A DNA stretch of 63,616 bases, counting the filler, from Perkinsus chesapeaki ATCC PRA-425 (Eukaryota; Protista; Perkinsozoa), in NCBI GenBank assembly GCA_013115145.1. It is 8 parts of 8 records of this genome, joined end to end, with 100 filler letters (N's around TTAATTAATTAA, not from the genome) between each part and the next. Parts side by side here need not be neighbours in the genome. Positions count along the whole stretch, not along the records: positions 52,020 to 56,070 come from JAAPAO010001325.1; 7 more parts are not named here. The stretch is one strand, 5' to 3'. The notes beneath the pieces are model-generated. The model saw only the letters and a program-made list of their open reading frames with translations. It made no database searches and had not been told where the DNA came from. The position numbers and the translations under genes are program-made. Below, in pieces: positions 52,104 to 52,543 of the stretch. Positions within the stretch are counted from its first letter, which is position 1. Each line of letters begins with the position of its first letter.

Positions 52104-52163
52104 TGCCCAGACCCAGGATCGAACTGAGGAGCTCCAGATCTTCAGTCTGACGCTCTCCCAACT
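52104..52163 (-). pseudogene. 5-prime-truncated tRNA-Phe(GAA)
   Basis: Minus strand reads AGTTGGGAGAGCGTCAGACTGAAGATCTGGAGCTCCTCAGTTCGATCCTGGGTCTGGGCA; the 5-prime acceptor strand and A-box start are replaced by unrelated sequence. Confidence 0.9.
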
Positions 52164-52253
52164 AGGACCGACCGAGGATTCAATTGATTGCTCTCCCAAC
52201 CCGGACCGAGCTAGGTCTGACGACCTAGCTCGGTCCGGGGCAAAAGCGCCTGC

Positions 52254-52336
52254 AAGGAGGGGGGAAAAGGGAGGGAGAGAAAAAGGGGAGGAAGGAAGAA
52301 AAAAGGAAAGAAGAAAGAAAGGAGGGGAAGAAGGAG
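52254..52336 (+). repeat. 83-nt pure polypurine tract
   Basis: Only A and G from 52254 to 52336. Confidence 0.95.
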
Positions 52337-52543
52337 TGGAAATGGATGCTTCACGCTTATATGTAGCTCAAAATAATGCCTGTGACTTGGGTTACCCTAG
52401 CACGCATGCGCACCGTTTCACACCTGAGGCACAAAGCCTGCGCAACAGCAAACACGTAGGATAAGATGTTCCGTAGGATAGTGTGTCTATTTACCATGAG
52501 AGTGGTTGTGAGTTCGAATCTCGCGCTTAGTCTTTTTACTATC

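What the first reader, a model, noticed from the sequence alone, without database searches (positions are those of the whole stretch)
52104..52340. Dada-like transposon abuts a tRNA-Phe broken at the A-box/D-loop: candidate tRNA-Phe-specific family
Seen: tRNA-Phe on the minus strand is intact from its 3-prime end to the D-loop (52163) and then stops. GCTCTCCCAAC is duplicated (52152-52162, 52190-52200), followed by a perfect 16-bp hairpin (52200-52215 / 52224-52239), an 83-nt polypurine tract and the transposase. Established (from memory): Dada DDE transposons insert site-specifically into U1/U6 snRNA and tRNA genes, and tRNA-targeting families were described in Perkinsus marinus. Inference: this is an element end; the internal copy of the D-loop sequence may be target-mimicking terminal sequence. 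I do not recall a Phe-targeting family.
Basis: partly seen in the sequence, partly recalled or inferred. Interest (0 to 1): 0.75.

Follow-up and report, generated by a model that had tools for sequence, protein, structure and literature searches.

The report
Dada transposon inside a tRNA-Phe gene
This 4-kb contig of the clam parasite Perkinsus chesapeaki holds one frameshifted copy of a Dada-type DNA transposon whose end sits at the spot in a tRNA gene (here tRNA-Phe) where Dada elements are already known to insert, so it is a new member of a known kind.

Summary
A tRNA-Phe(GAA) on the minus strand is intact from its 3' end to nucleotide 14 (52104-52163) and then stops. An 11-nt D-loop copy, a perfect hairpin (18 bp, not 16) and an 83-nt purine run follow.

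The protein is a Dada-superfamily transposase. It aligns end to end with Dada-tY_PMar of Kojima & Jurka 2013 at 45% identity, and it has the DDE triad, the DxxH motif and both zinc fingers.

The piece is a whole 4051-bp Perkinsus chesapeaki contig. GenBank's "intron" hides a one-base frameshift.

The tRNA breaks between nt 13 and 14. That is the downstream edge of the nt 8-13 site used by four of the five Perkinsus marinus tRNA-targeting families and five fish lineages.

The terminal 90 bp carries three copies of a 13-nt motif. A related 10.6-kb family has the same motif as its subterminal inverted repeat.

"Phe-specific family" cannot be tested: only one copy and one end are available, and relatives hit several tRNAs that share TAGCTC. 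A goldfish Dada family is already recorded in tRNA-Phe.

Verdict: a new member of a known kind, of modest interest.

The parts
52104..52163 (-). 3' part of a tRNA-Phe(GAA) gene, nt 14-73: D-loop, anticodon arm, T arm and 3' acceptor strand. Nt 1-13 are missing.
   Evidence: ARAGORN. Rfam tRNA 20.4 bits, below the gathering score of 29. Read by eye against the cloverleaf. The deduced 5' part GCCCAGATAGCTC gives only two 3-mismatch matches, both inside the coding sequence and at the number chance gives.
52164..52189 (+). Outermost element sequence abutting tRNA nt 14. It holds subterminal motif copy 1 (GGACCGACCGAGG, 52165-52177), then ATTCAATTGATT.
   Evidence: Direct repeat D1. The motif is 11/13 identical to the 3' subterminal repeat of the related WLWD01 family.
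52190..52200 (-). Internal exact copy of tRNA-Phe D-loop nt 15-25 (GTTGGGAGAGC on the minus strand).
   Evidence: The 26-nt repeat at 22/26 exceeds all 300 shuffles.
52200..52239 (.). Perfect 18-bp hairpin with a 4-nt loop. Each arm carries subterminal motif GGACCGAGCTAGG(TC) (copies 2 and 3) and the hexamer TAGCTC/GAGCTA.
52254..52336 (+). Uninterrupted 83-nt polypurine tract in the element's 5' region.
   Evidence: Dada-tY_PMar's published ORF begins with 28 residues made only of K, G, E and R, which fits about 84 nt of purine-only codons at the same place (inference).
52544..54238 (+). Transposase, part before the frameshift. CxCxYH at 52733-52750; CCCC zinc finger at 52985-53101; first catalytic D in LDHQ at 53498-53509; second D in LDCGCC at 53702-53719; DxxH at 53801-53815.
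54238..54240 (+). Site of a one-base frameshift relative to intact relatives, in a short A run. GenBank model FOL47_001398 bridges it with a 50-nt GT..AG 'intron' (54241-54290) that removes a conserved block.
54238..55854 (+). Transposase, part after the frameshift. Conserved KVGETDYRNTGEKVPLY; catalytic E in SLRGTSKVE (54307-54318); YNRRR (54412-54426); two CCHC motifs (55468-55521 and 55675-55740); stop codon at 55852-55854.
55855..56070 (+). 3' untranslated part of the element running to the contig end. The distal terminus is not reached.
   Evidence: Dada-tY_PMar is 4281 bp (Table 1 of PMC3706591), which would put the other end about 400 bp past the contig end (inference).

Best explanation
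The piece is a complete 4051-bp contig of Perkinsus chesapeaki. It carries one copy of a Dada-superfamily DNA transposon, disabled by a single frameshift or carrying an assembly error at that point.

The element is a family of its own. Its closest relatives are an unnamed P. olseni family (about 55% amino-acid identity) and Dada-tY_PMar of P. marinus (45%).

Its transposase-upstream end is joined to nucleotide 14 of a tRNA-Phe(GAA) gene, in the opposite orientation. That is the downstream edge of the nt 8-13 (TAGCTC, A-box) site where tRNA-targeting Dada elements integrate.

Inferred mechanism:
- A DDE/DxxH transposase with an IS256/MULE-like RNase H fold and CCCC and CCHC zinc fingers binds subterminal GGACCGA-type motifs at the element ends.
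- It also reads the tRNA D-arm sequence just downstream of the cut site. It integrates into multicopy tRNA genes, where insertions are tolerated.
- The terminal 90 bp (three motif copies, two forming the hairpin, two each preceded by a copy of the Phe D-loop) is the end that the transposase reads.
- The polypurine tract is a conserved part of the 5' region.

Shown: protein family, motifs, fold of a homologue, position of the break, repeat architecture, and the motif shared with another family. Inferred: that integration was target-directed, what the motifs, hairpin and polypurine tract do, and any preference for Phe.
For: - Dataset S1 of PMC3706591 prints Dada-tY_PMar. Its sequence is that of P0004/P0026, P. 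marinus XP_002784771.1.
- The window's two frames align collinearly with P0026 over its full length, at 52% and 39.5% identity. GenBank's model of this contig is 45% identical to P0026.
- Five window peptide motifs occur in Dataset S1 only in Dada-tY_PMar.
- D388, D420xxH423 and E575 of P0083 are invariant in A3. The CCCC and CCHC motifs are located.
- An AlphaFold model of the intact P. olseni homologue P0080 matches the IS256-family ISCth4 transposase best, at E = 1.5e-4.
- P0083 (P. chesapeaki FOL47_001398) lies on a 4051-bp contig and maps back at 98-99% identity.
- tRNA homology ends at A14. Nt 8-13 is the published insertion site for P. marinus tIA, tIB, tY and tG and for five fish lineages.
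- The repeat and the hairpin are far beyond chance.
- GGAC[CT]GA occurs only twice in the 10,592-bp related element, 16 and 15 nt from its two ends and in inverted orientation. Its extended forms match the window's copies at 11/13, and at 14 of 15 apart from a 4-nt insert.
- A purine run follows the motif inward in both families.
Against: - Only one junction is visible, and the contig ends before the distal terminus.
- The expected TAGCTC duplication is missing next to A14 (GGTCCT instead). This is known for some fish families (PMC8869645) but has not been reported for Perkinsus.
- The outer motif copy is 1 nt from the junction here, against 15-16 nt from the ends in the related family.
- The related multi-copy family and the other metagenome relatives show no tRNA flanks. 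Target specificity is therefore not universal in this clade.
- No second copy of this family was found, so 'family' rests on one sequence.
Confidence: 0.8

Rival explanations
1. One reading: this is a family dedicated to tRNA-Phe. The exact D-loop copy in its end would be a functional target mimic tuned to Phe.
For: - The internal 11-mer equals the Phe D-loop exactly and sits beside a subterminal motif in both + copies.
- PMC8869645 argues that Dada proteins bind mainly downstream of the insertion site. That is where the D-loop, the part that tells tRNAs apart, lies.
- Each P. marinus family was reported with its own tRNA.
Against: - One copy and one junction only.
- Fish families that target TAGCTC insert into Tyr, Lys and Phe alike.
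- The D-loop copy could instead be a scrap of a second tRNA-Phe gene.
Confidence: 0.3
2. The duplicated junction and the hairpin are a scar, not a working end. Two successive or aberrant events (one-ended transposition, nested insertion, or recombination between two disrupted tRNA-Phe genes) would have left a 26-nt solo end fragment, an 11-nt tRNA scrap and an inverted duplication.
For: - Both units have the form 'element-end motif joined to the tRNA at nt 14/15'.
- The outer and inner motif copies resemble the two different ends (3' and 5') of the related family.
- Kojima & Jurka describe one-ended events and tandem insertions.
- A perfect 18/18 palindrome looks recent.
Against: - The three motif copies lie within 75 nt of the junction and nowhere else, and no unrelated sequence lies between them.
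- Even a scar of two hits at the same tRNA-Phe position would itself indicate site-directed insertion.
Confidence: 0.3
3. Chance adjacency or an assembly chimera: a non-specific insertion, or a short-read misjoin, happens to abut a truncated tRNA pseudogene.
For: The contig is short, from a fragmented assembly, and ends in repeats. The multi-copy relative inserts without tRNA flanks.
Against: - The break falls at one specific position out of about 73, the edge of the published Dada site, in a genus where tRNA-targeting Dada families are documented.
- Element-type motifs start 1 nt from the break.
- An 11-nt repeat is too short to cause a misjoin.
Confidence: 0.07

Closest known systems
Dada-tY_PMar (Perkinsus marinus; Kojima & Jurka 2013, PMC3706591)
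   Same: - Same superfamily and same clade: 45% identity over the full length, with the same order of motifs (CxCxYH, CCCC finger, D, D, DxxH, SLRGTSKVE, YNRRR, C-terminal CCHC).
- No intron.
- A purine-only stretch upstream of the MPK start.
- Insertion at tRNA nt 8-13 where TAGCTC is followed by AG.
   Different: - Only 45% identical, so it is a different family.
- The host tRNA here is Phe, not Tyr.
- TAGCTC is not retained at the visible junction.
Unnamed Perkinsus olseni family (P0080 / P0082, KAF4746051.1 / KAF4689986.1)
   Same: Closest proteins found: 59.5% identity before the frameshift and 51% after it, collinear.
   Different: Different species and family. Its genomic context and target are unknown.
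Goldfish Dada-tY_CaAu (PMC8869645)
   Same: It inserts at nt 8-13 of tRNA-Tyr and of tRNA-Phe-GAA, and the flanking TAGCTC is often replaced by another hexamer. This is a precedent for both the Phe target and the missing duplication.
   Different: It is an intron-containing fish element. The authors state that fish Dada-tY and Dada-tY_PMar are not closely related.
Dada-U6 / Dada-U1 terminal architecture (PMC3706591)
   Same: There are no terminal inverted repeats. Short subterminal repeats are present, and one of them also occurs in the target gene.
   Different: [quoted passage not shown] Here the D-loop copy is 26 nt inside the junction, and only one end is visible.
IS256-family transposase ISCth4 (PDB 6xg8, 6xgx, 6xgw)
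   Same: Best structural match of the modelled catalytic core of homologue P0080 (E = 1.5e-4). This agrees with the published link of Dada to IS256, MuDR, hAT, P and Kolobok.
   Different: About 12% sequence identity and a TM-score of only 0.38-0.50 on the target. It is bacterial, with no zinc fingers of this kind and no small-RNA-gene targeting.

Membership tests
Dada superfamily of DNA transposons | Transposase homologous to published Dada transposases | tested here: met
   Dada-tY_PMar in Dataset S1 matches P0004/P0026. The window frames are 52% and 39.5% identical to P0026 and collinear with it. P0083 against P0026 is 45% identical with an E-value of 0.
Dada superfamily of DNA transposons | DDE triad with a DxxH (or CxxH) motif after the second D | tested here: met
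   D in LDHQ (53498-53509), D in LDCGCC (53702-53719), DTMH (53801-53812) and E in SKVE (54307-54318). In P0083 numbering, D388, D420, H423 and E575 are invariant in A3. Catalysis was not tested, and the copy is frameshifted.
Dada superfamily of DNA transposons | N-terminal CCCC zinc finger | tested here: met
   C148, C151, C183 and C186 are invariant in A1. They lie at 52985-53101.
Dada superfamily of DNA transposons | C-terminal CCHC zinc finger | tested here: met
   CPLCRLPRDSGHLIKNNRVIYC at 55675-55740 aligns with the C-terminal CCHC of P0026. A second CCHC lies at 55468-55521.
Dada superfamily of DNA transposons | 6-7 bp target site duplication | tested here: inconclusive
   Only one end lies in the contig. 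At that end the expected TAGCTC is replaced by GGTCCT. Replacement on one or both sides is documented for some fish families.
Dada superfamily of DNA transposons | Insertion at a fixed site inside a multicopy small RNA gene | tested here: met
   One junction: tRNA-Phe homology ends at nt 14, the edge of the published nt 8-13 site. A fixed site across several copies could not be tested.
Dada superfamily of DNA transposons | No terminal inverted repeats, but short subterminal inverted repeats | tested here: inconclusive
   The distal end is missing. The visible end has three GGACCGA-type motifs. The same motif is the symmetric subterminal repeat of a related 10.6-kb family.
The metagenome, viral and prokaryote collections gave no copy of this family.
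Functional tRNA-Phe gene | Complete cloverleaf with a 5' acceptor strand and the 5' half of the D stem (A box) | tested here: not met
   Nt 1-13 are absent. Rfam scores 20.4 bits, below the gathering score of 29. The 5' part gives only chance-level 3-mismatch matches in the piece.

The most novel reading that the evidence does not exclude
Dada ends mimic their target. Each subterminal transposase-binding motif at this end is preceded by an exact copy of the tRNA-Phe D-loop, so the same protein surface would read 'D-loop plus motif' on the element end and 'D-loop' on the target. A family could then switch to a new tRNA by changing its terminal mimic. The hairpin, which carries TAGCTC in both arms, would be part of that recognition structure.
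Probability: 0.2. Interest if true: 0.6.

Novelty: new member of a known kind. Interest (0 to 1): 0.3.

Why it matters
Dada elements are the only DNA transposons known to home to multicopy small RNA genes, and they have been proposed for targeted gene delivery.

- This copy extends the Perkinsus tRNA-targeting set to a third species and to a tRNA-Phe gene.
- It shows one end in base-level detail: a subterminal motif shared between families only 40% identical in protein, a D-loop copy, a perfect hairpin, and a polypurine tract also implied in Dada-tY_PMar. That gives concrete candidate binding sites to test.
- It corrects a GenBank gene model, whose 'intron' is a frameshift.

It does not change what is known about how Dada works or which site it targets.

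Tried and rejected
- **Pfam.** It gave only sub-threshold hits: DUF6729 at E = 0.027 and DUF3463. The intact relatives also have no Pfam family above its curated cut-off.
- **PDB by sequence.** The profile search found nothing meaningful.
- **Metagenome scan.** It returned 51 loci of relatives, none from this family.
  - ARAGORN found no tRNA in any locus.
  - Rfam at gathering threshold found nothing in 8 loci.
  - Rfam 'mir-598' hits in three loci lie inside coding sequence and are spurious.
  - blastn of the window's ends against the loci matched only purine-rich low-complexity sequence.
- **Hairpin pattern.** It is absent from viral contigs and genome contigs.
- **Intron reading of 54241-54290: rejected.** The 'intron' encodes, in the downstream frame, the block VGETDYRNTGEKVPLY, which is conserved in all relatives.
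- **A second tRNA at 52470-52537: rejected.** The T-arm-like GTGAGTTCGAATCTCGC plus TTTTT gives no Rfam match even at E = 10.
- **ATGTAGCTC at 52361 and 55900 as a duplication flanking the ORF: rejected.** About 30 exact 9-mer pairs are expected by chance in 4 kb (my estimate).
- **Inverted D-loop-like 14-mer in the ORF (53770-53783, 13/14).** It is at chance level, E = 0.32.
- **Inverted repeats between the left end and 55855-56070.** None was found beyond 8-mers.
- **Big representative search: not run.** The word searches and Dataset S1 had already settled the protein family. That library's 50% clustering and lack of names would not reveal copy number.
- **Reading frames.** The two frames were searched apart, by reference. 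I did not build or search a joined read-through. Where a full-length sequence was needed I used the database's own spliced model P0083 and natural intact homologues.

Full report
**What is in the sequence**

The piece (52020-56070) begins with 84 nt of flank. A minus-strand tRNA-Phe(GAA) follows, called by ARAGORN at 52104-52173. Laid on the cloverleaf, the match to a tRNA runs from the discriminator A73 (52104) through the T arm, anticodon arm and D-loop to A14 (52163), and stops there. Where nt 8-13 should read TAGCTC, the minus strand reads GGTCCT. Rfam's tRNA model scores 20.4 bits against a gathering score of 29. The 5' part deduced from the 3' acceptor strand (GCCCAGATAGCTC) gives only two 3-mismatch matches, both inside the coding sequence and at the number chance gives.

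Going right on the + strand, the features are:
- 52164-52189, AGGACCGACCGAGGATTCAATTGATT.
- 52190-52200, an exact second copy of the D-loop 11-mer.
- 52200-52239, a perfect hairpin.
- 52254-52336, an uninterrupted 83-nt purine run.
- 52544 onward, the coding region.

The hairpin arms are 18 bp, not 16. The direct repeat extends to 26 nt at 22/26 identity.

Statistics:
- The 26-nt repeat exceeds all 300 shuffles, whose maximum was 19.
- The bare 11-mer would recur in 41 of 500 shuffles.
- No perfect hairpin of 14 bp or more arose in 300 shuffles.
- The hairpin folds at -28.2 kcal/mol, z = -6.5.

**Source of the piece**

A word search with a P. olseni homologue returned P0083, 'hypothetical protein FOL47_001398 [Perkinsus chesapeaki]'. 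It is 1086 aa and lies on a contig of 4051 bp, the length of this piece. It maps back to the piece at 98-99% identity in two blocks. The piece is therefore an entire P. chesapeaki contig, and nothing beyond it can be seen here. The P0083 cluster has one member.

**The gene is frameshifted, not spliced**

Two frames are open: 52544-54295 and 54220-55851. Intact relatives read straight through the overlap...NGCVADEGIAYVQVGEADYRNTGVVLPVYKSLRGTSKVE.... The window's first frame supplies ...NGCVSDQGIAYV, and its second frame supplies KVGETDYRNTGEKVPLYRSLRGTSKVE. The frames swap at 54238-54240, in a short A run that is one base short relative to the relatives.

GenBank's model removes 54241-54290 as a GT..AG intron. 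That leaves a 17-residue gap against P0026, which deletes this conserved block. This fits the published statement that P. marinus Dada elements have no introns.

I searched the two frames apart, by reference, and did not build or search a joined read-through.

**The protein is a Dada transposase**

- Pfam has no family for it. The only hits are sub-threshold, such as DUF6729 at E = 0.027.
- The word searches found Perkinsus proteins. Cluster look-up gave the full-length P. marinus protein P0026, XP_002784771.1.
- Dataset S1 of Kojima & Jurka 2013 prints the Dada-tY_PMar protein. It matches P0004/P0026.
- The window's frames align collinearly with P0026 over its whole length, at 52% and 39.5% identity. 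P0083 against P0026 is 45% identical.
- They align better with an unnamed P. olseni family, P0080/P0082, at 59.5% and 51%.
- Five short window motifs occur in the 36-protein Dataset S1 only in Dada-tY_PMar. SKVE likewise occurs only there. tY_PMar is therefore the closest published family, and the window's protein is not one of the published ones.

The defining protein features are all present:
- CCCC finger: C148, C151, C183, C186.
- First D, in LDHQ.
- Second D, in LDCGCC.
- DxxH, as DTMH.
- E, in SLRGTSKVE.
- C-terminal CCHC.

An AlphaFold model of the intact homologue P0080 has pLDDT of 70-90 in most 10-residue blocks between residues 90 and 650. Its best PDB matches are IS256-family ISCth4 transposase chains, at E = 1.5e-4 to 3.8e-4. 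Retroviral integrases, Hermes, MuA and the P element transposase follow at E above 0.1. That agrees with the relationships published for Dada.

**Where the element sits**

Kojima & Jurka described five P. marinus families inserted in tRNA-Leu, -Ile, -Gly and -Tyr. TAGCTC is the putative duplication for tIA, tIB and tY.

The 2022 fish survey adds the following:
- Five fish lineages and four P. marinus families (tIA, tIB, tY, tG) insert at the orthologous nt 8-13.
- TAGCTC is followed by AG.
- Six tRNA types, including Phe and Tyr, share that hexamer.
- Dada proteins seem to bind mainly downstream of the site.
- In some families the flanking hexamer is replaced on one or both sides, so insertion does not always leave a duplication.

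The same paper records goldfish Dada-tY_CaAu in tRNA-Tyr seven times and in tRNA-Phe-GAA twice.

In the window the tRNA survives from nt 14, the downstream edge of that site, and the transposase runs opposite to the tRNA. The missing TAGCTC has a published precedent but remains a point against a textbook insertion.

**The terminal region**

The metagenome scan gave no copy of this family. It did give about 30 copies of a relative that is 40% identical in protein, from one assembly (WLWD01).
- Its ends are sharp: about 20 loci share each boundary while their flanks differ. The element is 10,592 bp.
- GGAC[CT]GA occurs only twice in it, 16 nt from the 5' end and 15 nt from the 3' end, in inverted orientation. 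That is the subterminal inverted repeat arrangement described for Dada.
- Its 3' copy, GGACTGAACGAGG, is 11/13 identical to window 52165-52177. By my estimate, the chance of such a match within 60 nt of either end is about 0.002, and the comparison was chosen after seeing the data.
- Read inward from that end, a 63-nt purine run follows the motif.
- Its 5' copy, GGACTGAG[GTCC]CTAGGTC, matches the window's hairpin arm GGACCGAGCTAGGTC.

The window has three such motifs, all within 52165-52236 (52165 +, 52203 +, 52224 -). A bare GGACCGA also occurs at the ORF start. Both + copies are preceded by the Phe D-loop 11-mer plus 2 nt.

The published Dada-tY_PMar ORF starts with 28 residues made only of K, G, E and R before the shared MPK... 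start. That is what about 84 nt of purine-only codons would encode. A polypurine tract of about the same length as the window's 83 nt therefore probably lies at the same place in that family. This is an inference.

Together these results mark 52164-52336 as element sequence and 52163|52164 as the junction.

**What remains open**

- Whether the D-loop copy and hairpin are a working, target-mimicking end, or a scar of two events at the same tRNA-Phe position, cannot be decided from one copy.
- Whether the family prefers Phe cannot be decided either.
- The related WLWD01 family has unrelated, non-tRNA flanks. Targeting is therefore not universal among close relatives of the Perkinsus clade.
The big representative search was not used because the family question was already settled.

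**Verdict**

'Element end at the A-box/D-loop' is well supported, and 'Phe-specific family' is untested. This is a new, so far single-copy, member of a known superfamily, in a genus where tRNA-targeting Dada elements were first described. Insertion into tRNA-Phe already has a precedent in goldfish. Interest is modest.

Noticed in passing
window 54241-54290: GenBank gene model FOL47_001398 (P0083) treats this 50-nt GT..AG stretch as an intron. In the downstream frame it encodes the conserved block VGETDYRNTGEKVPLY. The real feature is a one-base frameshift at 54238-54240, so the deposited protein lacks 17 conserved residues next to the catalytic E.
   Followed up: yes
window 52509-52537 (+): A T-arm/B-box-like GTGAGTTCGAATCTCGC, then GCTTAGTC and TTTTT, ends 7 nt before the transposase ATG. 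It looks like a tRNA 3' end with a Pol III terminator, but Rfam gives no match even at E = 10. A similar GAGTTCGATTCCCAC followed by a T run lies about 150 nt from the 3' end of the WLWD01 relative (L009:17170-17210).
   Followed up: partly
L009:6756-17347 and about 30 other WLWD01 loci (L007-L050): A 10.6-kb, intron-containing Dada-like family in one metagenome assembly. Copies are mostly 90-99% identical, suggesting recent activity, and are sometimes head to tail (period 10.53 kb in L009). The ends are sharp and the flanks unrelated, with no tRNA or snRNA nearby and no clear duplication. Several 3' flanks begin GAGCTA or GAGGTA; GAGCTA is the reverse complement of TAGCTC. The host organism is unknown.
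   Followed up: partly
P0084 vs P0026 (proteins): P. olseni protein KAF (FOZ62_023899) is 86% identical over 1063 aa to Dada-tY_PMar of P. marinus. The tY family is therefore shared by two Perkinsus species, while the window's family is a separate lineage at 45%.
   Followed up: partly
Dataset S1 of PMC3706591, Dada-tY_PMar N-terminus: The published ORF starts with MTA plus 28 residues made only of K, G, E and R, upstream of the MPKDAKSDAEW start shared with the window and with P. olseni proteins. That extension is probably a translated polypurine tract, not protein.
   Followed up: no
window 52208, 52226, 52364, 53268, 54475, 55903, 56044: The hexamer TAGCTC (either strand) occurs 7 times in 4 kb, against about 2 expected by my estimate. 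Two copies are the hairpin arms. CTAGCTCG recurs at 56043, near the contig end.
   Followed up: partly
window 53770-53783 (+): TAGTTGGGATAGCG inside the ORF is a 13/14 inverted match to the tRNA D-loop region. It is at chance level (E = 0.32).
   Followed up: yes
L004:196-310 vs L006:120-150: Two JGI metagenome relatives with intronless ORFs (up to 1007 aa) share their upstream region, except for an insertion of about 110 bp in L004. It was not examined further.
   Followed up: no
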